A program made the translations under genes and the position numbers. From Mytilus californianus (Eukaryota), in contig NW_026262701.1 in NCBI RefSeq assembly GCF_021869535.1, positions 98,394,001 to 98,458,000 of the forward strand: 64,000 bases of DNA, read 5' to 3'. Below the pieces are notes generated by a model. It saw only the letters and a program-made list of their open reading frames with translations. It searched no databases and was not told the DNA's origin. This document shows positions 36,991-51,351 of this stretch, one piece after another; position 1 is the stretch's first letter; every line of letters starts with the position of its first letter.

Positions 36991-37579
36991 ATATGAAACA
37001 CTTTCATAATCATGTGCAAACGACACGCATAACAAATTAATTTTAGATATATATATAAAGCCATCCTATAAGGTTTCGGATATATCAATTAAAAGAGAAG
37101 CAGAAGATACAAAGGGGATAATCAGAACTCATAAATTGAAGGGAAACAGACAAACACAAGACAAACAAGTACACAAAACACCACATACAAAACTATAAAG
37201 AGTCAGACTGAACAACACGAACTCCACCAAAAACTGGGAGAGACCTCCGTTTTTCCGGAAGGCTAAGCAGATTCTGCTCCAATTGTGGCACCCGTCATGT
37301 TGCTCAGGTACAAATTCGAGGATGTCTCATTCGGTAATTAACTTTGATATATATATTTGTTTTCCTGTGAATATTGCATGTAGTGGAAATCGACTAGCCA
37401 AAATTGCGACGGATAAACTAAACTATTGACAAAATATGTAAAACTCACAATTTTGTATGAAACACATTGGTCCTACCTCTTTCTCGTTAAACTACAAGTA
37501 TAAACGACAAATTCAATATAACAGATCATTGACAGACTCCAATATGTCAAAACTGGCGGACTGTTTTTTTTTTAAACGT

Positions 37580-38025
37580 TACGGTACTGGGTCGTGAGTT
37601 AACAAGTGCATAAGTATCGGATGAGAAGTGAGTAGGTGCCTAAAGTACTGAGTCATGAAAAAATTAGGTACACGGAGTACTGGGTCGTGAGTAGGTGCAT
37701 GGAGTATTTGGTCGGAAATGAGTAGGTGCCTTGTGTACTGGTTCGTGAATGCGTAGGTGCTTAAAGTACTGGACTAGGTTTCACAAAGAAACGGCTTACG
37801 ACTAAGATTGATCGTAAGTATACCGAATTGTTCATAACTTACGATCAATCTAAGTTGTAAGTTTTTTTGTTAAAAGGAATCCTGGTTCTTGAGTGATAAG
37901 GTGCTGGGTCGAAAGTGGTAGGTGCCTGGAGTACTAGGTGGTGAGTGAGTAGGTACTTGGAGTGCAGGGCCGCGAGTAAGAAGGTGTCTGAAGTACTTGG
38001 TTGGAAGTGAGTAGATGACTGGAGT
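37580..38025. repeat. Degenerate ~34-bp tandem array with a nested palindromic MITE (~37773-37885)
   Basis: gtgagtaggtgc...agtactgg units; insert arms cttacgactaagattgatcgtaagt / acttacgatcaatctaagttgtaag. Confidence 0.65.
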
Positions 38026-38356
38026 ACTGATTAATGGAGATCACCCACAGTTTTTAGTGGGATTCTTGTTGCTCAGTCTTTAGTTTCCTATGTTGTGTTA
38101 TGTAGACTGTTGTCTGTCTTCGTCGTTTTTCGTTTTTGCCATGGTAATGCCCTTTTTTTTTAAATCAATTAAGCATGTCTCAGCACATCAATTGAATTAA
38201 TCGGTTTTGGATCTTTATATTTTTTTGTCATCTTAACATGCATTGAATATGTGTCCGGTTGTTTACAAGAATCAACGTAAAACCCTTTAAAACGACCATA
38301 ATTTGATTCCTTTAACAGTGACGTATACTACACAAAATTTTCGGTTTTATATCAAG

Positions 38357-38684
38357 TTATTGTAATGAATTAAATAGAATAGCTTTAAAGAACAGTATGT
38401 ATAGAATAATGGTACAATGATTATTTTTAGTAGCCACAGAAGAGATATCATCATTGGATATACAAACAGGAAGTTGTGTAGTAGATGGACGTGACGTAGT
38501 AGTTGTCGACGCATGCGCAGTAGTTTGTCCGACGTCGATCAATGGATACACTTCAGACCATAGTTTTACTGTGTCTGGCTTCAAGAAAACTTTCATCATT
38601 ATTTCAGCATTTAAATCTAGATATTCTCTTTCTTTTATATCGAATGGAATCCATACTACAGAATCCGTGTATCCGTTTGGTGAC
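38357..38684 (-). CDS. Carboxylesterase terminal exon: C-terminus of domain 3, Thr/Ser stalk, hydrophobic tail
   Basis: Acceptor ttttcttgtag|G; SPNGYTDSVVWIPFD...YLDLN...KLWSEVYP is homologous to the 5' part of exons 2/3; then QTTAHASTTTTSRPSTT and IILYILFFKAILF before the stop. Confidence 0.88.
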
Positions 38685-41600
38685 CTACAAGAAAAAAATG
38701 TAATTCTTTTAAAAAACTTTTTACCTTTATGAAAAATAATACACATGCTGCAAGATAAGCATGTGAATTAACAGTCAGTCTTCAAATCATCTGGATTGCC
38801 TCGGTGGTTTAATAGAAGCGTGTTCGCCTCGATTGCGGGAGGTCGTAGGTTTGAACCCCGGCCAGGTCAAACCAAATACTTTAACATAGGTATTTGTTGC
38901 TTTTCCGCTTAAAACGCAGCAATAAGTAATAAGATCAAAGACTGTTGGGCTCGGACTCATAATAATGTGTTTGGGTAGATTTGTCTTCTGTGGACTGACT
39001 ACCAAGTGTGAACTAGCACGTTAAAAGACCGACTCAGCGTGTCGTGCTAGTCCACAGCAATGTTAATATTCATAAAATTGAGAATGGAAATGGAGAATGT
39101 GTCAAAGAGACAACAACCCGACCATAGAGCAGACAACAGCCGAAGGCCACCAACGGGTCTTCAATGCAGAGAGAAACTCTCGCACCCGGAGGCGTCCTTC
39201 AGCTGGCCCCTAAACAAATATGTATACTAGTTCAGTGATAATGGACGTCATACTAAACTCCAAATTATACACAAGAAACTAAAATTAAAAATGATACAAG
39301 ACTAACAAAGGCCAGAGGCTCCTGACTTGGGACAGGCGCAAAAATGCGGCGGGGTTAAACATGTTTTTTGAGATCTCAACCCTCCCCCTATACCTCTAGC
39401 CAATGTAGAAAAATAAAACGTACAACAGTACGCACAGTAAAACTCAGTTTAAGAGAAGTCCGAGTCCGATGTCAGAATAGGAAACAAAAGAAAATAAACA
39501 AAATGACAATAATACATAAATAACAACAGACTACTAGCAGTTACTGACATGCCAGCTCCAGACCTCAATTAAACTGATTGAAAGATTATGTCTTCATCAT
39601 ATGAATATCAGGCACAATCCCTCCTGTTAGGGGTTTAGTATTATACCATCATAAAATTTATGAGAAGAACTTAACCCGTGTCCTGCCAACAACTGGTTTT
39701 AGAATAAATATGTTTAATTCCGATGCAAAGACCCTATAAGTGAATCAATATTAAAGCCAAAATATGCAATCTTTAATGACCTGACAACATTATCGTAATT
39801 ATATCCCTTCTTAATAACTAAAGTCTGTTTAAAGGTTTTGTTAGCTTTTGAGGTGAATACTGACATTTTTGTGCTTTGTAAAGAATATTACCACAAAAAA
39901 TTGGATGTGAAATACCCGAACGTATAAGATGTCTGCATGTTGAGTTATATTTACGAATGATGTCCTTATAGTTCAGTTTCATGTTCTCGTCTTGAATATA
40001 CTCTTAACTTGCCGCTGGGCGTCAAACAGCCATCAATCCATCCATCATATCATCTGGAGGCTTCAGTATCGGGGTTTCTCGGAGGTCTGACTTTGGCGAC
40101 AAATGATACACAGAATAATATTTAATACATATAGAAATCGATTATAATTACATATTTTCAATGCAAAAACACTTCATCAAAGATACCAGGCATTAATTGT
40201 GTACGTCAGAAACGCGTTTCGCCTGCTAAAGACTCATCATGTATGCTCGAATAAAAAAGTTAAAAGACCAAATCAAAAACAAAGTTGATGAGCACTGACG
40301 ACCCAAAATTCCGAAAGGTTTTGCTAAATACAAATAAGTCAATTTATTCCTGGGTCTGAGTCTTTAATCTGTCTCCATACTATCCTATATGTTATACCAG
40401 GGTAATTCATGACACATCATGCAACATAAACAAATGAAACTAGACACACACATATTTAATCGGCTTGAAAAATAGATATAACATGGAGGACAGTGTTTCA
40501 GACACAAATTTAACAACTCTAAAAGTCAGCTGTCGATCTTTTCTGGATTTTGCAGAAGAAATTCTAACCTTTTTGACGAAACTTTAAAAGAAAAAAAAGA
40601 ACTTATTCTAATGTATTTTACGTACCCTGTTCTTGCAAATGTTGTCCAATACTGGATGAGATTTCTAGACAGTTTCATACCGTCAGTGGATACAACTTCA
40701 GGTCTGAACATGTAAATAAGTTCGTCTGCATGACCACTACCATTGAACCAAGATGGGAAAGGTCCACCCCACGGCTCTGGACTTGGCATGGAAAATTGAT
40801 AATGATATGTCGTCGCTCCATACATAGAATGCAATTCCAACATCCTTATTGTTGGATAAACAAACATGATATCTGCTAATAGATGTGTAGCAAGATTGCT
40901 CTGTTCATTTGGAGAGTTTGCTACAAAGTAAAAATCACACAATTGACGTTTTACTTCCTCATTTTGTTTCAGATATGTTTTGACATATTCGGCTATAACT
41001 TCTTCACAAGCCACTCTGTGTGGTATACCTTCATTCAGTGAAAAATTAAATCGCTCCTGAATTTGTGGAAATAAAGTGACGACTAATATTGAGCCTTCGT
41101 TAGAAGTTGTTCCAGCAATCATGTCCAGAGAACGAAAGAATGTAGCTACGGCAGAAGTAGGGTCCTCCAGAGAAAGTATTGGATTTTCTGGAAACAATTC
41201 ACCGTCCACTACTGGGTAATTGTCCGACATGTAGTGTACTTTATCGAGTTGAGCAGTGGCATAAAAATCTGTATAACTTAATAGATCTTGGACTGATAAA
41301 TTCCTCAGACAATCAACAAACGCATATTCATCATCAATTGAACAGCCAGTTCTATTTGCTAGGCCTGTAGCATATTCCCTGATAGCCTCCGATTTACGCA
41401 TTAGAATTTTGCTATGAACACCACTCTGACATATAACTCTCTGAAACAAACCTTTGTTCGCAGGAATCAAGGATTGCAGCGATGTACTCATTGCACCTGC
41501 TGATTCTCCGAAAATCGTTACGGAATCTGGATTGCCACCGAAAGCTTTAATATTATCATGCACCCATTGTATTGCTAGTTTTTGATCCCATAAACCAAAA

Positions 41601-44600
41601 TTTCCTCTAGCGGCCGGATGGTCCATAGCAAAAAATCCAAACACACCAAATCTATAATTAAGAGTAACGACGATAACATTTCCTGTCATGGCAAATTCTG
41701 TAACATCGTCCTGATGTCCATAGCCAAGTTCAAATCCACCGCCATGAATCCATATCATAACGGAATATAGTTTCGTTTTACTGATCACTTTTGGTATGTG
41801 GATGTTAAGGAATAGACAGTCCTCTGAAATACCAGATGTAAACGATGTCTTCTCGAATTCTGGTACGTTTTGAGAGCACGCGGCACCGAATAACGTAGCA
41901 TTTAGCGTATGTATCCAGTTTCCTATAGGTTGTGGTTTCTGGAATCTCCGTTGTCCTACTGGGGGCTTAGCATATGGTATGCCAAGGAATTCGAATACAC
42001 TTTCTCCACGTTTTGGATCGGTTCTTTTCAAACCTCTTATAGGTCCTGATGGTGTAGTAATGGTTATCTGATTAGGAATACCTTCTGCAACTTCTATTAA
42101 GGGATATATTTCAGACCAAAGCTTGATTGTCTCGGGCTTCATTGACCTTTTTAATGTTATTTGTGTGTTAAGGTCCAGATACATGTTTGTCTCATCAAAT
42201 TGTTCCCAGTAAACACTTTCTCCAAACTGATTAGGAGAGCTGAAACAAACAGGAAAAGCAAATGAAGAAATCTTAAATAAACTGGACATACTGTTTCAAT
42301 GGTTACAAATAAAAAACACACAGTCTCTACATCTGCGTAATCATCGAATAAAAGAGAACAAAAATGTTCAAAAACATTCAAATGAAGAACCATAAAATAA
42401 AGAACTGGGAGGGTAAAGAAAAATATCTTAGAATTTAAATGGTTAGATGTATATCAACTTATGCAATAAAGTTTTTTTTTAAAAGACAGTTAACTTTTTA
42501 AATGAATTAGTGGATGTGACACTGCATATAAATGAAACTTAGGATGTGCAATTATTTTTCAAGGTTCTTTGTTATCAATTGATTGTTAAATGTGTTACTT
42601 TACGTCCAGTTGAAAGTGTTTATTTTACATTTAAGTCGAAAACAATTAAACAATTACTCTTTCTAGAAGGTTCTGCTAAGTTATTCTACCGGGTTAAATG
42701 ATTGGAAAAACTAGTTATCAGCAGAAAAAAGGTAACCTTTGGTAGAAACTGACATTTTCCTTGCATCAGCTAGCTATATATCGAATTCCTCAAAGACTTT
42801 TATTTGATAATTATTTAGCAAGTTGAAAGAGCGTCACTTCCCTAATACGGGCACCATATTTAACAACCTAATTATGACCACTTTTGACTTGAATGTTTTA
42901 CATAAGAAAATGCCTGTACCAATTCAGGAATATGACAGTTGTTATCCATTCGTTTGATTTGTTTGAACTTTTGATTTTGCCATTTGATTGGGGACTTTCC
43001 TTTTTGAATTTTCCTCGGAGTTCAGTATTTTTGTGATTTTACTTTTTATATAGTGTACAGTCACAGTCAAATCACTGGTTGTTTGGGGAGGCCCAGTCGA
43101 CCAAATTTCTATATCGCAGTCATTCCGTTGGTTATATTCAAGGGGTAACGTCTTCGAGATCGGGGCCTCGATGGCCGAGTGGTCGAAGTAGTTCAACTAC
43201 TCTAATCAATAGCCAGTCAACACTGAGGTTGTGAGTTCGAACCCCGCTCATGCAAAGGCACTCGAATCTAATCTTAATTCTTTTGAGGTTTTAGATAAAA
43301 TACATGATTTTGATGGTCCTTTTAATTCTGTTGTAAGATATGATTTTTCTACTCTCTATACTACACTTCCGCACAATCTTATCAAGAAAAAGTTTTCATA
43401 TTTAATTAAATGGTCTTTTGAAAAATCTCATTACAAATTTATTTGCTGTAACTCGTTTAAAGCCTTTTTTGTAACGAAAAAGGAAAGTAAGCTAGATACA
43501 CTTACTGGAAATGTGAAGATATGATTGAATCTTTAAATTTTCTCCTGGACAACATATATGTACGTTTTGGCGATAAAGTGTGTCGACAAGTAGTAGGTAT
43601 TCCTATGGGCACTAACTGCGCCCCTTTAATAGCAGATTTATTCCTGTATTGCTATGAATCTCAGTTTATGACCAAACTCAGTAAATACACGTCATTTTTA
43701 CATTTGGTTGATACATTCAACAATACCTTCCGTTATCTAGATGATATTTTTTCGTTAAATAATCCAGAGTTCTCTAAATATACTACCAAAAAATTACCCA
43801 ATAGAACTTACTTTAACTAAATCTAACATAAACAGCAGTAGTTGTCCTTTTATGGATTTGGACATTTCAATCTCTAAAGGAAAACTCCATACGAAAATTT
43901 ACGACAAAAGAGACGATTTTTCATTCCCTATTGTTAATTTTCCTTTTTTAGACGGCGATGTTCCTTTGGCTCCATCATACGGTGTTTATATATCCCAACT
44001 CGTTCGTTATGCCCGTGTGTGTAGTGATGTCATAGATTTTAACGAACGTAATCAATGCATCACTGGTAAATTATTAAGTCAGGGATTTCGTTACCATAAA
44101 TTACGTAAAACTTTTGCTAAGTTTTTTCATAGATACAAAGATTTGATTAGTAAATTTGGCTGTACCTGTAGAAAACTGATTAAAAACGGTATTTCACATC
44201 CTAAATTTTACGGTAATATTGTACTTAAAGCGCAGAAATCACTATGTAATCCGTGTAAACTCATCGAACCCTTAAACAAACTTATTAGTAAAGGTTATCT
44301 TACCAATGTTGTAATTAGATCTTTGAATATAGTTTACATTGGCACTAATATCGATTTTGTCATCAGCAAATTAAAACATAACTAAATTTGCATTTTTTTC
44401 AAACGGGATGTATAAAGACACACCCACGTTCATTTTGATCTATAAAGCGGTTAAACTCCTAACTGTCCAACTGTCTGTCGATACATTTATTTTTGGCATT
44501 GCACAAGTCATGTCTTCTTTGACTGTCCATGACGTAAAAAAACTAAATCCCTGGGATGTGTTTTAGTTGATTTTAGTCTCTGATGCATGATTTTTTTTAT

Positions 44601-47600
44601 TATTAATTGTTTTGGCTTTTAACTAGCTGTCAGTAACTGCGAGTACTCTCAAATCGTACTTTCTTGTTTATTTTACCTGTTGATACTAATTGTAATGCTT
44701 TTTTGTTATTTAATGTTTTTCAGGGTTATATCTGGTCAATATACCAGCTTTAATAAGTGTTTGGTATTACTATAAATTTTCACTTCGTACTATGAACATC
44801 AAAATTTTTTATTTTGTAAAAATATTTCCTTTCTCTATTGGAACTGTACACGTATACCTAACAACAAAATTATTTTCATTTACCTGTGTTTAAAGTAACT
44901 GCAAATGGCTGATATTTTTGTTCGAGCATATTGTTTTTCTTAAATTGTTTAACATTTCATACCGATATAACATGTTACTTTTATTATTCTTCCCTTAGTT
45001 TATTTATTTTGTATTTCATTGTATCATAGGTCAAATGTATTTGTTCAGTGTATGTTCACTGGTGTTAAGATGTCCTTTAATTGAGTTAAGCTATTTCAGT
45101 TGATATTTTATAGTGTGTCTTTCTATGTTGTGATGTTACACTATTGTTTCAGAAAAAAGGTGAAGGTTTGGTACCATTGAAACGTTTAAACCCGTTGCAT
45201 TTGTTTGCACCTGTCCTAAGTCAGGAATCTGATGTTCAGTAGTTGTCGTTTGTTGATGTGGTTCATAAGTGTTTCTCGTTTCTCGTTTTTTATATAGATA
45301 AGACCGTTGGTTTTCCCGTTTGAATGGTTTTACACTAGTAATTTTTAAGGCCTTTTATAGCTTACTGTTCGGTGTGAGCCAAGGCTCCGTGTTGAAGACC
45401 GTACTTTGACCTATAATGGTTTACTTTTATAAATTTTGACTTAGATGGAGAGTTTTCTCATTGGCACTCATACCACATCTTCTTATATCTATTGAATTGT
45501 CAGTTTTCCTACCGAAGGTCCGTTGTTTTTTTATCCGGGAACTTCGGCTTCCTCCAACAATAAAAACTAACCGCCATGAAATAGCACAATAGTGTTGAAA
45601 GCGGTGTTAAACACCAATCAATCAATCAATCAATCAATCTTCGAAATCAGACGCATAAATATGCTTTAGTTGAATTATGAGTCCAAAGTCAATGACAGAA
45701 CTTGATAGAATAACGCATATCGACCTCAATAGTCAAACGTCAAGGGAAATAAGTACCACTTTTTCGACAAATCATGGAAATCTGCTAAACATCTGGTATA
45801 CATATAAAAATCGCTTTAAGGATAACTAGTGTGTGTCGCTTTCTCTTAATTTATGACATAAATATATCATGAACTAAATTCCCAACTATCAAAAAATTTG
45901 AATTTAAACTGTCACGTTTAACATGAATATTTACAAGTATTTATATCATTAGCCTTTAAAATTTAAAATATCAATCTACATGCATATTTAATTTGCCAAC
46001 ACTGTCCATGATATTTATATTTTGATATAATTCGCTATTCAAAGCTGCAATAATTTTCCATTATCAATGCTCATTCTGCATAATGAATGGAAGTAATTTG
46101 CATACCGCTGATGTCATTCTTGAGGAAATGCCCCTTGTTTTTTTGTGCGAAACTGTCAACAATCTAGCTTTCCATAATCTTTGTTAGAACTAATTTCAGC
46201 AAAATTACATTTACGCAAATTTAGCAACAAGTTTGCAAATTTTCAATATATTTACAACGACCATACATACAGTGTTTTTATGCTATGGTTCTTATTTTCC
46301 AGAATAACTACGTTAGATGCAAATAAACTGATGTAAAGAACCTTAATGTAAGTAGAAATTCTATTATATTCAATATTATAACAAATAACAAGCTGTGTTA
46401 CATACCCTGTTTTTGCAAATGATGTCCAATACTGGATGAGATTTCTAGACAGTTTCATACCGTCGGTGGATACCGCTTCAGGTCTGAACATGTAAATAAG
46501 TTCGTCTGCATGACCACTACCATTGAACCAAGACGGGAAAGGTCCACCCCACGGCTCTGGACTTGGCATGGAAAATTGATAATAATATGTCGTCGCTCCA
46601 TACATAGAATGTAATTCCAACATCTTTATTGTTGGGTAAACAAACATGATATCTGCATAAAAATGTGTAGCAAGAAGGCTCTGTTCATTTGGAGAGTTTG
46701 CTACAAAGTAAAAATCACACAATTGACGTTTTACTTCCTCATTTTGTTTCAGATATGTTTTGACATATTCGGCTATAACTTCTTCACAAGCCACTCTGTG
46801 TGGTATACCTTCATTCAGTGAAAAATTAAATCGCTCCTGAATTTGTGGAAATAAATAGATGACTAATATCGAGCCTTCGTTAGAAGTTGTTCCAGCAATC
46901 ATGTCCAGAGAACGAAAGAATGTAGCTACGGCAGAAGAAGGGTCCTCCAGAGAAAGTATTGGATTTTCTGGAAACAGTTCACCGTCTACTACTGGGTAAT
47001 TGTCCGACGCGTAGTATACTTTATCGAGTTGAGCAGTGGCATAAAAATCTGTATAACTTAATAGATCTTGGACTGATAAATTCCTCAGACAATCAACAAA
47101 CGCATATTCATCATCAATTGAACAGCCAGTTCTATTTGCTAGACCTGTAGCATATTCCCTGATAGCCTCCGGTTTACGCATTAGAATTTTGCTATGAACA
47201 CCACTCTGACATATAACTCTCTGAAACAAGCCTTTGTTCGAAGAAATCAGGGACTGCAGTGATGTACTCATTGCACCTGCTGATTCTCCGAATATCGTTA
47301 CGGAATCTGGATTGCCACCGAACGCTTCAATATTATCGTGCACCCATTGTATTGCTAGTTTTTGATCCCATAAACCAAAATTTCCTCTAGCGGCCGGATG
47401 GTCCATAGCTAAAAATCCAAACACACCCAATCTATAATTAAGAGTAACGACAATAACATTTCCTGTCATGGCAAATTCTGTAACATCGTCCTGATGTCCA
47501 TAGCCAAGTTCAAATCCACCGCCATGAATCCATACCATAACGGAATATAGTTTCGTTTTACTGATCACTTTTGGTATGTGGATGTTAAGAAATAGACAGT

Positions 47601-49037
47601 CCTCTGAAATACCAGATTTATACGATGTCATCTCGGATTCTGGTACGTTTTGAGAGCACGCGGCACCGAATGACATAGCATTTAGCGTGTGTATCCAGTT
47701 ACCCATAGGTTGTGGTTTCTGGAATCTCCGTTGGCCTACTGGGGGCTTAGCATATGGTATGCCAAGGAATTCGAATACACTTTCTCCACGTTTTGGATCG
47801 GTTCTTTTCAAACCTCTTATAGGTCCTGATGGTGTAGTAATGGTTATGTGATTAGGAATACCTTCTGCAACTTCGATTAAGGGATATATTTCAGACCAAA
47901 GCTTGATTGTCTCGGGCTTCATTGACCTTTTTAATGTTATTTGTGTGTTAAGGTCCAGATACATGTTTGTCTCGTCAAATTGTTCCCAGTAAACACTTTC
48001 TCCAAACTGATTAGGAGAGCTGAAACAAACAGGAAAAGCAAATGAAGAAATCTTAAATAAACTGGACATACTGTTTCTATGGTTACAAATAAAAAACACA
48101 CAGTCTCTACATCTGCGTTATCATCGAATAGAAGAGAACAAAAATGTTCAAAAACATTCAAATGAAGAACCATAAAATAAAGAACTGGGAGGGTGAAGAA
48201 AAATATCTTAGAATTTAAATGGTTAGATGTATATCAACTTATGCAATAAAGTTTTGTTTTAAAAAGATAGTTAACTTTTTAAATGAATTAGTGGATGTGA
48301 CACTGCATATAAATAAAACTTAGGATGTGCAATTATTTCTTAGGTTCTTTGTTATCAATTGATTGTTAAATGTGTTACTTTACGTCCAGTTGAAAGTGTT
48401 TATTTTACATTTAAGTCGAAAACAATTAAACAATTACTCTTTCTAGAAGGTTCTGCTAAGTTATTCTACCGGGTTAAATGATTGGAAAAACTAGCTATCA
48501 GCAGAAAAAAAGGTAACCTTTGGTAGAAACTGACATTTTCCTTGCATCAGCTAGCTATATATCGAATTCCTCAAAGACTTTTATTTGATAATTATTTAGC
48601 AAGTTGAAAGAGCGTCACTTCCCTAATACGGGCACCGTATTTAACAACCTAATTATGACCACTTTTGACTTGAATGTTTTATATAGTGTACAGTCACAGT
48701 CAAATCACTGGTTGTTTGGGGAGGCCCAGTCGACCAAATTTCTATATCGCAGTCATTCCGTTGGTTATATTCAAGGGGTAACGTCTTCAAGATCGGGGCC
48801 TCGATGGCCGAGTGGTCGAAGTAGTTCAACTACTCTAATCAATAGCCAGTCAACACTGAGGTTGTGAGTTCGAACCCCGCTCATGCAAAGGCACTCGAAT
48901 CTAACCTTAATTGGCTTGAATTGTCAGTTTTCCTACCGAAGGTCCGTTGTTTTTTTTATCCGGGGAATTCGGCTTCCTCCAACAATAAAAACTAACCGCC
49001 ATGAAATAGCACAATAGTGTTGAAAGCGATGTTAAAC

Positions 49038-49068
<31 letters not shown>

Positions 49069-51351
49069 TTCGAAATCAGACGCATAAATATGCTTTAGTT
49101 GAATTATGAGTCCAAAGTCAATGACAGAACTTGATAGAATAACGCATATCGACCTCAATAGTCAAACGTCAAGGGAAATAAGTACCACTTTTTCGACAAA
49201 TCATGGAAATCTGCTAAACATCTGGTATACATATAAAAATCGCTTTAAGGATAACTAGTGTGTGTCGCTTTCTCTTAATTTATGACATAAATATATCATG
49301 AACTAAATTCCAAACTATCAAAAAATTTGAATTTAAACTGTCACGTTTAACATGAATATTTACAAGTATTTATATCATTAGCCTTTAAAATTTAAAATAT
49401 CAATCTACATGCATATTTAATTTGCCAACAATGTCCATGATATTTATATTTTGATATAATTCGCTATTCAAAGCTGCAATAATTTTCCATTATCAATTCT
49501 CATTCTGCATAATGAATGGAAGTAATTTGCATACCGCTGATGTCATTCTTGAGGAAATGCCCCTTGTTTTTTTGTGCGAAACTGTCAACAATCTAGCTTT
49601 CCATAATCTTTGTTAGAACTAATTTCAGCAAAATTACATTTACGCAAATTTAGCAACAAGTTTGCAAATTTTAAATATATTTACAACGACCATACATAGA
49701 GTGTTTTTATGCTATGGTTCTTATTTTCCAGAATGACTACGTTAGATGCAAATAAACTGATGTAAAGAACCTTAATGTAAGTAGAAATTCTATTATATTC
49801 AATATTATAACAAATAACAAGCTGTGTTACATACCCTGTTTTTGCAAATGATGTCCAATACTGGATGAGATTTCTAGACAGTTTCATACCGTCGGTGGAT
49901 ACCGCTTCAGGTCTGAACATGTAAATAAGTTCGTCTGCATGACCACTACCATTGAACCAAGACGGGAAAGGTCCACCCCACGGCTCTGGACTTGGCATGG
50001 AAAATTGATAATAATATGTCGTCGCTCCATACATAGAATGTAATTCCAACATCTTTATTGTTGGGTAAACAAACATGATATCTGCATAAAAATGTGTAGC
50101 AAGAAGGCTCTGTTCATTTGGAGAGTTTGCAACAAAGTAAAAATCACACAATTGACGTTTTACTTCCTCATTTTGTTTCAGATATGTTTTGACATATTCG
50201 GCTATAACTTCTTCACAAGCCACTCTGTGTGGTATACCTTCATTCAGTGAAAAATTAAATCGCTCCTGAATTTGTGGAAATAAATAGATGACTAATATCG
50301 AGCCTTCGTTAGAAGTTGTTCCAGCAATCATGTCCAGAGAACGAAAGAATGTAGCTACGGCAGAAGAAGGGTCCTCCAGAGAAAGTATTGGATTTTCTGG
50401 AAACAGTTCACCGTCTACTACTGGGTAATTGTCCGACGCGTAGTATACTTTATCGAGTTGAGCAGTGGCATAAAAATCTGTATAACTTAATAGATCTTGG
50501 ACTGATAAATTCCTCAGACAATCAACAAACGCATATTCATCATCAATTGAACAGCCAGTTCTATTTGCTAGACCTGTAGCATATTCCCTGATAGCCTCCG
50601 GTTTACGCATTAGAATTTTGCTATGAACACCACTCTGACATATAACTCTCTGAAACAAGCCTTTGTTCGAAGAAATCAGGGACTGCAGTGATGTACTCAT
50701 TGCACCTGCTGATTCTCCGAATATCGTTACGGAATCTGGATTGCCACCGAAAGCTTCAATATTATCGTGCACCCATTGTATTGCTAGTTTTTGATCCCAT
50801 AAACCAAAATTTCCTCTAGCGGCCGGATGGTCCATAGCTAAAAATCCAAACACACCCAATCTATAATTAAGAGTAACGACAATAACATTTCCTGTCATGG
50901 CAAATTCTGTAACATCGTCCTGATGTCCATAGCCAAGTTCAAATCCACCGCCATGAATCCATACCATAACGGAATATAGTTTCGTTTTACTGATCACTTT
51001 TGGTATGTGGATGTTAAGAAATAGACAGTCCTCTGAAATACCAGATGTATACGATGTCATTTCGGATTCTGGTACGTTTTGAGAGCACGCGGCACCGAAT
51101 GACGTAGCATTTAGCGTGTGTATCCAGTTACCCATAGGTTGTGGTTTCTGGAATCTCCGTTGGCCTACTGGGGGTTTAGCATATGGTATGCCAAGGAATT
51201 CGAATATAGTATCACCAGTCGTATTAAATGTTCTTTGTATACCTCGAACTTGTCCTGACGGTGTTGGTATAGATACATAATCTACTTTGTCAAGGCAGTT
51301 GGATAACGATAGCACAGGAAGCAAAATCAGTATATAGCATAACATTTGCAT
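38357..51351 (-). CDS. Secreted, probably GPI-anchored triple-domain type-B carboxylesterase (4 coding exons, predicted 1690 aa)
   Basis: Exons 49835-51351 (1517 nt), 46406-48019 (1614), 40626-42239 (1614), 38357-38684 (328 incl. stop) total 5073 nt in one frame. All three introns are phase 2 in the same Gly codon (ACA GG|gtatgt/gtacgt ... ag|). Three sets of FLGIPYAKPP, SEDCLFL, HGGGF, GESAG, NEG, GHADE motifs. Confidence 0.85.
38795..39060 (+). mobile_element. tRNA-derived SINE (CORE-domain-like) in esterase intron 3
   Basis: A-box-like ggtggtttaatag, B-box-like ggtttgaacccc, followed by ggtcaaaccaaa...ggtatttgttgcttttccgct. Confidence 0.65.
39069..39966 (-). mobile_element. 5'-truncated Penelope-like retroelement (RT C-terminus, 3' UTR with SECIS-like hairpin), sense to the esterase
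   Basis: Minus-strand translation KDIIRKYNSTCRHLIRSGISHPIFCGNILYKAQK...RSLKIAYFGFNIDSLIGSLHRN* (stop 39714-39716, one 4-bp indel) aligns with the C-terminus of ORF 43852-44385. Confidence 0.8.
39590..39672 (-). promoter_or_regulatory. SECIS-like (type II) hairpin
   Basis: ATGA-N12-AA-N25-GA; UGAU/UGAU quartet; helix II 9 of 10 pairs (ggtataatac / gggattgtgcc); apical mini-stem cct-aac-agg; helix I cata/tatg. Confidence 0.65.
40201..40250 (-). ncRNA. Degenerate minimal type I hammerhead ribozyme within a retrozyme-like fragment (~40160-40365)
   Basis: Minus strand: AUGAUGA-GUC-uuuagca-GGC-GAAA-CGCG-UUUC; the CUGAUGA core and the GUC cleavage triplet are mutated. Confidence 0.55.
40626..42239 (-). 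CDS. Carboxylesterase exon 3: C-terminus of domain 2 + body of domain 3
   Basis: Same acceptor and same 1614-nt length as exon 2; donor GG|gtacgt. Confidence 0.9.
42901..43048 (+). mobile_element. 148-bp short interspersed repeat insertion
   Basis: Absent at the paralogous site (48671-48690); flanked by tttta; inverse copy of the same family at ~33670-33800. Confidence 0.85.
43280..45491 (+). mobile_element. 5'-truncated Penelope-like RT retroelement (RT remnant 43280-44385, long 3' UTR) inserted into a SINE
   Basis: YDFSTLYTTLPH, GIPMGTNCAP, FRYLDDIF, IYDKRDDF motifs over three ORF pieces (two frameshifts, one TAA); no C-terminal GIY-YIG domain; empty site at 48906-48925. Confidence 0.85.
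44521..44578 (+). promoter_or_regulatory. SECIS-like hairpin in the retroelement 3' UTR
   Basis: ATGA(44529)-N12-AA-N22-GA(44569); UGAC/UGAU quartet; helix II 8 of 10 pairs incl. wobble; apical tcc/gga mini-stem; helix I gact/agtc. Confidence 0.55.
46406..48019 (-). CDS. Carboxylesterase exon 2: C-terminus of domain 1 + body of domain 2
   Basis: Acceptor tttgtttcag|C at 48020/48019; begins SPNQFGESVYWEQFD...KLWSEIYP (COesterase C-terminal segment), runs into ITITTPSG of a new domain; donor GG|gtatgt. Confidence 0.88.
48795..49068 (+). mobile_element. Intact tRNA-derived SINE with (TCAA)n tail (V-domain-like); its paralog is split into 43162-43279 and 45492-45638
   Basis: A box tggccgagtggtc, B box gttcgaaccc, body ttcggcttcctccaacaataaaa, microsatellite tail. 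Confidence 0.8.
49835..51351 (-). CDS. Carboxylesterase exon 1: signal peptide + N-terminal ~485 aa of domain 1
   Basis: MQMLCYILILLPVLSLSNC hydrophobic leader (ATG 51349-51351, alternative ATG 51343-51345), then DYVSIPTPSG...GESAG...GHADEL...WTSFAKTG; donor GG|gtatgt. Confidence 0.9.

What the first reader, a model, noticed from the sequence alone, without database searches (positions are those of the whole stretch)
38357..51351. One gene encoding three complete carboxylesterase catalytic domains in tandem (1690 aa, signal peptide to GPI-type tail)
Seen: only the first ORF has a signal peptide. The second and third ORFs start, right after a good acceptor, with the C-terminal ~55 aa of a COesterase domain and run in frame into a new domain. 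All introns are phase 2 in the same Gly codon and the four exons sum to 5073 nt with no stop. Each domain keeps HGGGF, GESAG, NEG and GHADE plus the two usual Cys pairs. The inter-domain linker is only about 10 residues (LIEVAEGIPNQ) with no RxxR furin site. Established: type-B carboxylesterases and cholinesterases normally have one catalytic domain per chain and oligomerise non-covalently. Inference: a covalently linked trimeric ecto-esterase, possibly for digestion or xenobiotic/toxin hydrolysis or sequestration at an epithelial surface. I cannot say whether such multi-domain forms are already described in bivalves.
Basis: partly seen in the sequence, partly recalled or inferred. Interest (0 to 1): 0.9.

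Follow-up and report, generated by a model that had tools for sequence, protein, structure and literature searches.

The report
Three-domain carboxylesterase gene in mussel
A California mussel gene really does string three complete esterase enzyme domains into one open reading frame; the layout is rare but not unique, because other bivalves evolved similar chained esterases independently, and the full-length message remains to be shown.

Summary
On the minus strand, four exons (51351-49835, 48019-46406, 42239-40626, 38684-38357) have canonical GT..AG, phase-2 introns. They give a 5073-nt ORF of 1690 aa with three full PF00135 domains, each keeping the Ser-Glu-His triad.

The window is Mytilus californianus. 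RefSeq annotates only the last 628 aa, with no signal peptide.

History, from sequence comparison:
- M. trossulus has a two-domain version of the gene, so that form is older. The trossulus copy is broken.
- The third unit comes from a very recent unequal crossover between exon 3 and exon 1. Units A and B are 99.1% identical, and the switch lies at 47734-47746.

Copies differ with dN/dS about 0.3, so the domain exons are under coding constraint.

RNA evidence is partial. Two probable RNA runs cover a fused exon up to its acceptor, and one contig leaves exactly there. One true RNA-seq run shows nothing.

The same fused-exon layout occurs in predicted proteins of oyster, pearl oyster and a clam. 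A domain tree shows these arose independently. I found no paper describing such forms.

Verdict: a real gene and a new architectural variant of a known enzyme family. It is not unique to this genome. The three-domain protein is likely but unproven. Interest is moderate.

The parts
49835..51351 (-). Exon 1 (A). It encodes the start codon, a signal-peptide-like N-terminus (aa 1-19, 51295-51351) and domain 1 up to FAKTG. Catalytic Ser214 is at 50710-50712, Glu349 at 50305-50307 and His471 at 49939-49941.
48020..49834 (-). Intron 1, GT..AG, phase 2. A copy of the same ancestral intron as intron 2.
46406..48019 (-). Exon 2 (B), a fused cassette exon. It encodes the C-terminal ~55 aa of domain 1, linker 1 (47848-47874) and domain 2 up to FAKTG. 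Ser752 is at 47281-47283. The exon is a chimera: like exon 3 on its 5' side and like exon 1 on its 3' side, with the switch at 47734-47746.
42240..46405 (-). Intron 2. It matches intron 1 apart from an inserted repeat or transposon block of about 2.25 kb (about 43240-45496), set inside a wider high-copy region (42747-45532).
40626..42239 (-). Exon 3 (C), the second fused cassette exon. It encodes the C-terminal part of domain 2, linker 2 (42068-42094) and domain 3 up to FARTG. Ser1290 is at 41501-41503. The RefSeq protein starts at the internal Met of this exon.
38685..40625 (-). Intron 3, GT..AG, phase 2.
38357..38684 (-). Exon 4 (D). It encodes the C-terminal part of domain 3, a Ser/Thr-rich stalk (38474-38527), a hydrophobic C-terminal segment (38372-38416) and the stop codon.

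Best explanation
This is one intact four-exon gene of Mytilus californianus. It encodes a secreted type-B carboxylesterase with three complete, catalytically competent domains in a single chain.

Structure: each 1.6-kb internal exon encodes the last ~55 residues (C-terminal helices) of one domain, a 9-residue linker, and the first ~480 residues of the next domain. Phase-2 introns in the Gly codon of FAKTG join the exons.

Origin, in two steps:
1. An older in-frame fusion of two neighbouring paralogues removed the tail, stop codon, intergenic DNA and signal peptide between them. The resulting two-domain gene is shared with M. trossulus.
2. A very recent unequal crossover between exon 3 and exon 1 added a third unit.

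Function (inferred): the product is a glycoprotein of roughly 190 kDa with three independent Ser-Glu-His sites. It hydrolyses carboxylic esters (lipid, dietary or xenobiotic) and is not a dedicated cholinesterase. A Ser/Thr-rich stalk and a GPI-type hydrophobic tail hold it at the cell surface. The ER retention signal (HDEL/RDEL) that most of its single-domain paralogues carry is absent.

What is shown and what is inferred:
- Shown: the ORF and splice sites, the domain content, coding constraint, the duplication history, recurrence of the architecture in other bivalves, and transcription and 5' splicing of a fused exon.
- Inferred: the full three-domain mRNA and protein, the membrane anchoring, and the substrates.
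For: Gene model and domains:
- Canonical splice sites and an unbroken 5073-nt frame.
- Three PF00135 matches, with the triad and oxyanion motifs aligned to BChE.

Coding constraint:
- dN/dS is 0.36 for B vs C and 0.35 for A vs C. Synonymous changes are in excess (binomial p = 3.5e-4 and 2e-4).
- dN/dS is about 0.30 against M. trossulus (p = 3e-8). The 56-codon 5' piece gives 0.285, on 7 synonymous and 9 non-synonymous changes.

Duplication history:
- Units A and B are 99.1% identical over 2.29 kb, intron included. B and C are 96.9% identical.
- Exon B carries the exon-C letter at exon nt 274 and the exon-A letter at nt 286.
- The M. trossulus locus has only two units.

RNA:
- Runs X1 and X2 have depth on exon B only. 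They have none in the unique intron flanks on either side.
- One X1 contig (319 nt) matches 47748-48019 and then leaves at the acceptor for 47 nt.
- 47 nt equals the 30-nt unitig overlap with the contig that ends at exon nt 1597, plus the 17 nt from there to the donor. That is what a junction from a domain exon into a fused exon predicts.
- Depth is 15.7 on the shared domain part and 8.9 on the junction part.

Annotation:
- RefSeq protein P0151 equals model residues 1063-1690 exactly. It starts inside the fused 5' piece and has no signal peptide, so it is a truncated model.

Comparative:
- The same fused-exon layout is present in the DNA of Saccostrea echinata (three domains), Pinctada imbricata and Mactra antiquata genes.
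- None of 29 other paralogue exons in this genome has it. All 29 have signal peptides.
Against: - No read or contig was displayed that spans an A-to-B or B-to-C junction letter by letter. The junction inference rests on contig arithmetic.
- The only certain RNA-seq run (X21, about 6% of it sampled) has zero depth on exon B.
- RefSeq did not join the exons.
- The M. trossulus orthologue carries a stop codon in the fused 5' piece and several frameshifts, so the gene is dispensable in a close relative.
- Units A and B are so young that their intactness says little.
- All introns share one phase, so exons 2 and 3 can be skipped in frame.
- The X1 and X2 sequences are a mosaic of B-type and C-type letters. 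They come from another individual or species, whose unit number is unknown.
Confidence: 0.6

Rival explanations
1. The locus is a real gene, but exons 2 and 3 behave as cassette exons. Most mRNAs would then skip one or both, giving mainly one- or two-domain esterases, with the three-domain form a minor or absent isoform.
For: All three introns are phase 2 at the homologous codon, so any skip stays in frame. Internal exons of 1.6 kb are unusually long. The ancestral state is two domains. The depth ratio in X1 (15.7 vs 8.9) fits two domains per transcript somewhat better than three.
Against: Exons 2 and 3 have the same strong acceptor and donor sequences. A fused exon is included and spliced in X1 and X2. 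Oyster and pearl oyster gene models keep every fused exon.
Confidence: 0.2
2. The locus is decaying or only partly expressed. Exons 1 and 2 would be silent, and only an exon 3-4 transcript would be made, as in the RefSeq model. That transcript would give a product without a signal peptide, or none at all, so the gene would be on its way to the state seen in M. trossulus.
For: RefSeq annotates only residues 1063-1690. The M. trossulus orthologue is disrupted. X21 has no reads here. I saw no canonical AATAAA within 1.35 kb downstream of the stop codon.
Against: All 5073 nt are open, whereas trossulus has accumulated about nine disruptions. dN/dS is about 0.3 between the copies and includes changes that arose within M. 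californianus. An X1 contig continues past the fused-exon acceptor into non-intron sequence, so an upstream exon is joined there. A disulfide-bonded ER-type fold without a signal peptide is implausible. Near-identical exons make short reads map to several places, which by itself can explain the truncated automatic model (inference).
Confidence: 0.13
3. The third unit is an assembly artefact. The real gene would have two domains, as in M. trossulus.
For: A and B are 99.1% identical, a level that could be confused with allelic difference in a highly heterozygous bivalve. Depth in DNA run X18 could not be interpreted cleanly, because the tool dropped records.
Against: The window has no gaps. Exon B is a specific C/A chimera with three private substitutions, which is not the pattern of an allele of A or C. 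Intron 2 carries a 2.25-kb insert that intron 1 lacks. Even if this rival were true, a two-domain fused gene would remain.
Confidence: 0.05

Closest known systems
Single-domain type-B carboxylesterases of Mytilus (CES-like; RefSeq names such as 'fatty acyl-CoA hydrolase precursor, medium chain-like' and 'carboxylesterase 5A-like')
   Same: Same family, with domains up to 57% identical (64% to an unnamed Logan-derived protein, P0172). The large first exon likewise holds the signal peptide and most of the domain. The phase-2 intron after FAK(T/S)G is at the same place. The catalytic motifs are the same.
   Different: These proteins have one domain per chain. Most end in HDEL or RDEL, an ER retention signal. 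The window gene has three domains, no HDEL, and a Ser/Thr-rich tail with a hydrophobic end.
Predicted tandem COesterase proteins of other bivalves: Saccostrea echinata XP_061179317.1 (3 domains), Pinctada imbricata KAK3097719.1 (2), Mactra antiquata KAL4226755.1 (2)
   Same: The exon logic is identical. Internal exons of 522-541 aa encode the C-terminal piece, a linker of about 0-8 aa and the next domain, with no signal peptide. Each ends in a hydrophobic C-terminal tail.
   Different: They are not orthologues. In the domain tree the domains of each protein group with each other, and the window's domains nest among Mytilus single-domain genes, so the fusions are independent. All of these are uncharacterised predictions.
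Vertebrate cholinesterases (BChE and AChE; e.g. PDB 6EMI, 1P0I)
   Same: Best-matching solved structures (E about 1e-70). The triad and the first two disulfide loops align. The C-terminal helix region aligns to the 5' piece of the fused exons.
   Different: These have one catalytic domain per chain, and their oligomers form through C-terminal peptides or a four-helix bundle. In the window protein the choline-binding Trp of the omega loop falls in a deletion, and the third disulfide Cys is Tyr. It is therefore not a cholinesterase in the strict sense.

Membership tests
Type-B carboxylesterase/lipase family (Pfam PF00135) | Profile match above the curated cut-off | tested here: met
   Three matches of 422-426 bits against a cut-off of 27. 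Each covers profile positions 4-471 of 515 within one exon.
Type-B carboxylesterase/lipase family (Pfam PF00135) | Ser-Glu-His triad, the HGGG oxyanion motif and the two N-terminal disulfide loops | tested here: met
   GESAG, SNEGS, GHADE and HGGGF occur once per domain. They align to BChE Ser198, Glu325 and His438, and the Cys pairs align too.
Cholinesterases (AChE/BChE) | Choline-binding Trp (W82/W84) on the omega loop; third disulfide (C400-C519 in BChE) | tested here: not met
   In the alignment to 6EMI the Trp lies in a segment absent from the query, and the Cys400 position is Tyr.
ER-resident CES-type carboxylesterases | C-terminal H/K/R-x-EL retention signal | tested here: not met
   The protein ends ...AILFNSLQ. 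Paralogues P0174, P0012, P0181, P0194 and P0195 end in HDEL or RDEL.
GPI-anchored ecto-esterases | N-terminal signal peptide plus a C-terminal signal made of small omega-site residues, a short polar spacer and a terminal hydrophobic stretch | tested here: inconclusive
   The N-terminus is hydrophobic. The tail has the small and polar residues SSVATKNNH followed by a 15-residue segment with mean hydropathy 2.4 that reaches to 4 residues from the end. No GPI predictor was available, and a C-terminal membrane anchor fits equally well.
GPI-anchored ecto-esterases | Release from membranes by PI-PLC | not testable with these tools
   Needs a bench experiment.
Tandem multi-COesterase proteins (a group seen only in databases) | One exon runs from the C-terminal piece of one domain, through a short non-hydrophobic linker, into the next domain | tested here: met
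   Seen in the window's exons 2 and 3, and likewise in loci L014, L015 and L016.
Tandem multi-COesterase proteins (a group seen only in databases) | Common descent with the oyster, pearl oyster or clam tandem genes | tested here: not met
   In the domain tree the domains of each tandem protein cluster by protein. The window's clade sits among Mytilus single-domain genes.

The most novel reading that the evidence does not exclude
Bivalves repeatedly and independently build covalently chained esterases with several active sites. They do so by fusing neighbouring paralogues in frame and then amplifying the resulting same-phase cassette exon. Domain number would still be changing in living Mytilus: two units, now dead, in M. 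trossulus and three in M. californianus, where the count may be polymorphic. That would point to selection for many esterase sites on one surface anchor, for example for scavenging or hydrolysing dietary, algal or xenobiotic esters at an epithelium.
Probability: 0.3. Interest if true: 0.6.

Novelty: new variant of a known kind. Interest (0 to 1): 0.42.

Why it matters
- Enzymology: carboxylesterases and cholinesterases are textbook one-domain-per-chain enzymes that form oligomers non-covalently. A natural chain of three intact domains with 9-residue linkers would be a ready-made test of what covalent multivalency adds, such as local catalytic density, stability, or one anchor serving three sites.
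- Ecotoxicology: mussel carboxylesterase activity is widely used as a pollution biomarker, so an unannotated enzyme of about 190 kDa with three active sites would matter for how those assays are interpreted.
- Evolution: the locus is a clean, datable example of new domain architecture arising by intergenic deletion followed by unequal crossover at same-phase introns. It shows partial concerted evolution between the domain exons, and the same outcome was reached independently in oysters, pearl oysters and clams.
- Annotation: near-identical cassette exons defeated the automatic annotation, since RefSeq holds only the last 628 aa. Several multi-domain database entries are instead merged neighbouring genes.

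Tried and rejected
- Read laying (one call allowed). The true RNA-seq run X21 gave no reads on exon B. This is no evidence against expression, because the tissue is unknown and only about 6% of the run was sampled. The junction and loose-end tables were filled with transposon signal from intron 2, so the 47 letters beyond the acceptor were not displayed.
- Copy number from DNA run X18. I first read the doubled depth as proof that A and B are separate copies. I dropped this because X18 carries its own mosaic of letters and the tool reported that records had been left out.
- Search for short RNA-derived protein fragments across the junction: blank.
- Exact look-up of the RefSeq protein's locus: blank, because the window's own genome is withheld there. 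How RefSeq treats exons 1 and 2 is therefore unknown. No near-identical model of 278-940 aa contains exon 1.
- Common origin of bivalve tandem esterases: rejected by the domain tree.
- Cholinesterase identity: rejected.
- A link between tandem architecture and a GPI-like tail: rejected. The Pecten and fish tandem forms end in KTEL, HAEL or HSEL, and one single-domain Mytilus paralogue has a hydrophobic tail.
- Literature: six full-text searches found nothing on tandem COesterase or cholinesterase domains. A seventh failed on a syntax error.
- Structure and complex prediction: not run.
Full report
**1. The observation**

They are bounded by canonical GT..AG sites, with strong acceptors (polypyrimidine tract then CAG or TAG). 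They sum to 5073 nt and translate to 1690 aa with a single terminal stop. Each intron interrupts the Gly codon of the FAKTG/FARTG motif after its second base.

The three large ORFs are the only ORFs of 200 aa or more in the 64-kb window. The DNA is about 33% GC, so chance is excluded.

Each large exon matches Pfam COesterase (PF00135) at E about 1e-126, over profile positions 4-471 of 515. The missing C-terminal part of the fold is encoded at the start of the following exon. In a search of solved structures, the first 47 residues of exon 3 align to butyrylcholinesterase residues 488-531. The body of the exon aligns to residues 5-479, with GESAG, SNEGS and GHADE on Ser198, Glu325 and His438.

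Each domain has one copy of HGGGF, GESAG, SNEGS and GHADE. Between domain envelopes there are 9 residues, EVAEGIPNH and EVAEGIPNQ, which are neither hydrophobic nor dibasic.

**2. Where the window comes from and what is annotated**

The window's genome has 1.65 Gb in 175 contigs. A RefSeq protein, 'carboxylesterase 5A-like [Mytilus californianus]' (P0151, 628 aa), is identical to residues 1063-1690 of the model. That is exon 3 from an internal Met (24 codons after the acceptor) plus exon 4. The protein lies on a contig of 122,239,455 bases, the length of contig C121, which holds the window.

This model has no signal peptide. It begins with 31 residues that belong to the preceding domain, so it is a truncated model. 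No other near-identical protein of 278-940 aa exists in the collection. No long representative has more than 61% identity to exon 2. Exons 1 and 2 therefore appear to be unannotated as protein.

A likely reason, by inference, is that short reads across the A-to-B and B-to-C junctions map to several places. The last 296 nt of exons 1 and 2 are identical, and the first 90 nt of exons 2 and 3 differ at one base.

**3. History of the locus**

Self-comparison shows three tandem units:
- Exon 1 from nt 146 onward plus the 5' part of intron 1 is 99.1% identical, over 2.29 kb, to exon 2 from nt 243 onward plus the 5' part of intron 2.
- The 3' part of intron 1 plus exon 2 is 96.9% identical to the 3' part of intron 2 plus exon 3.

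Exon 2 is a chimera. It carries the exon-3 letter at exon nt 274 and the exon-1 letter at nt 286, which places the switch at window 47734-47746. After that point it differs from exon 1 at only five sites. This is the expected product of an unequal crossover between exon 3 and exon 1 of a two-domain ancestor.

Intron 2 later gained, or intron 1 later lost, a repeat block of about 2.25 kb.

The M. trossulus orthologous locus (L013) has exactly two units: an exon-1-like exon, one fused exon and a tail exon. It is about 93.5% identical in the two large exons and 90.4% in the tail exon. The two-domain gene therefore predates the split of the two species.

The trossulus copy is broken. It has a stop codon in the fused 5' piece and frame-shifting indels in all three exons.

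Among sites that are informative across the four domain exons of the two species, 9 group by position and 20 group by species. The two domains were therefore already distinct before the split and have since been partly homogenised by gene conversion.

The internal C-terminal piece ends ...LWSEIYPLIEV. This resembles the end of single-domain paralogues just before their HDEL signal, for example ...LWSDIYTLIEIYNNREEHDEL in P0174. The first fusion thus looks like an in-frame deletion running from the tail of an upstream paralogue to just past the signal peptide of a downstream one (inference).

The gene sits next to a cluster of single-domain paralogues just beyond the window's end.

**4. Is it under selection and expressed?**

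dN/dS is 0.36 for exon 2 vs exon 3, 0.35 for exon 1 vs exon 3, and about 0.30 against M. trossulus. The 56-codon 5' piece gives 0.285, on small counts. Synonymous changes are significantly in excess (binomial p = 3.5e-4, 2e-4 and 3e-8). The domain exons, and as far as the small counts allow the fused 5' piece, have therefore evolved as coding sequence.

Reads were laid on 42150-48100:
- The one certain RNA-seq run, X21, had no reads on exon 2. It matched only the transposon block of intron 2.
- Two runs labelled 'RNA?' (X1 and X2) have depth from 46423 to 48019 and none in the unique intron flanks on either side. A DNA run would not give this pattern.
- X1's contigs tile exon 2 with 30-nt overlaps. 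One contig of 319 nt matches 47748-48019, which covers the linker and the whole 5' piece, and then continues 47 nt beyond the acceptor in sequence that is not intron.
- Those 47 nt equal the 30-nt overlap with the contig that ends at exon nt 1597 plus the 17 nt from there to the donor. A unitig running from the 3' end of a domain exon across the splice into a fused exon would look exactly like this.
- Depth on the domain part is 15.7 and on the junction contig 8.9. This fits two or more domain copies per transcript.
- The letters themselves were not displayed, so this is supportive rather than proof.
- The X1 and X2 sequences are a mosaic of exon-2 and exon-3 letters. They come from a different individual or species, whose unit number is unknown.

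**5. Comparison with what exists elsewhere**

A full HMMER scan of 1.84 billion representative proteins with exon 2 returned 48 proteins of 900 aa or more among the best 150, all but one with two or more matched stretches. Sorting them by the sequence between domains gave two main classes:
- Likely merged gene models, with a hydrophobic tail plus a signal peptide between domains. Examples are Lineus P0002 and Ostrea P0007; Ylistrum P0009 also looks like one by eye.
- Direct fusions with short, non-hydrophobic linkers.

A further set has linkers of about 30 aa without a hydrophobic stretch.

For three direct fusions I checked the DNA:
- Saccostrea echinata XP_061179317.1 has internal exons spanning aa 417-951 and about 951-1491.
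- Pinctada imbricata KAK3097719.1 has one internal fused exon.
- Mactra antiquata KAL4226755.1 has one internal fused exon.

Each internal exon encodes the C-terminal piece, a linker and the next domain, as in the window. The intron lies at the same FAK.G position in the Saccostrea gene.

Further short-linker forms occur in Solemya, Pecten, Lepidoptera and teleosts. Forms with linkers of about 30 aa occur in a hemichordate and a sea star.

A maximum-likelihood tree of 78 single domains puts the domains of each tandem protein together. It puts the window's three domains inside a Mytilus clade of single-domain genes. The architecture has therefore arisen repeatedly and independently, or has been strongly homogenised within genes.

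In the M. californianus genome itself, 29 other paralogue exons all begin with a signal peptide. This gene is the only fused one I found.

Six full-text literature searches found no description of tandem carboxylesterase or cholinesterase domains.

**6. How it most likely works**

Each domain has everything a type-B carboxylesterase needs, so three independent active sites are expected. The omega-loop Trp that binds choline is absent, and so is the third cholinesterase disulfide. The protein is therefore a carboxylesterase, not a cholinesterase.

Most close paralogues end in HDEL or RDEL and should stay in the ER, like mammalian CES enzymes. This gene instead ends in a Ser/Thr-rich stretch followed by a 15-residue hydrophobic terminus. 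That is the pattern of a GPI-attachment signal or a C-terminal membrane anchor. A surface location is thus plausible but untested.

Because all introns share one phase, isoforms with one, two or three domains are all possible in frame. I could not test this.

**7. Verdict**

The gene structure is real and well supported. A multi-domain transcript is supported indirectly, and the three-domain protein is likely (about 0.6) but unproven.

The architecture is a genuine departure from characterised enzymes of this family. It is not unique, because uncharacterised predicted proteins of the same design are already in public databases for other bivalves. I rate it a new variant of a known kind, of moderate interest (0.42).

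Noticed in passing
window 42747-45532 (intron 2): A high-copy repeat or transposon nest with a block of about 2.25 kb bounded near 43240 and 45496. It has very high depth in every run and is transcribed on both strands in RNA run X21. Reads joining 43238 to 45496 exist, so copies without the insert occur elsewhere. The 177-aa ORF at 43852-44385 (+) has no Pfam match.
   Followed up: partly
L013 7041-12890 (Mytilus trossulus, GCA_036588685.2): The orthologue has two units only and is disrupted. It has a stop codon in the fused 5' piece (W to stop) and indels of +2, -1, +1 and -1 in exon 1, -1 in the fused exon, and -20, -5, -1 and +4 in the tail exon. RefSeq models it as a 339-aa 'cholinesterase-like' protein.
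   Followed up: yes
window exons 1 and 3 vs L013: Partial concerted evolution between the domain exons of one gene: 20 sites group by species and 9 by position. Homology between exon 1 and exons 2/3 starts abruptly at FEFLGIPY, and the first ~30 mature residues stay diverged.
   Followed up: yes
G000:C121:98461778-98508105 (just beyond the window's end): A cluster of at least five single-domain paralogue exons lies within about 75 kb on both strands. Most Mytilus proteins of this clade end in HDEL or RDEL. One (P0203) has a hydrophobic tail like this gene's.
   Followed up: partly
window 37000-38356 (minus strand, downstream of the stop): There is no canonical AATAAA or ATTAAA within 1.35 kb after the stop codon, only variants such as TATAAA 10 nt downstream. 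The composition is also odd there (AT skew 0.18 at 36-38 kb).
   Followed up: no
P0002, P0007, P0009, P0020, P0038, P0079, P0095, P0110, P0136: Many public 'multi-domain' COesterase proteins have a hydrophobic tail plus a signal peptide between domains. They are probably neighbouring genes merged by gene prediction, so counts of PF00135 per protein overstate true tandem forms.
   Followed up: partly
window 47800-47830 and 42020-42050 (start of domains 2 and 3): Domains 2 and 3 carry two dibasic KR pairs (GLKRTDPKRGES) about 12-20 residues after the linker. Domain 1 has GIQRTFNTTGDT, with an N-glycosylation sequon, at the same place. These are not furin sites. Whether they are ever cleaved is unknown.
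   Followed up: no
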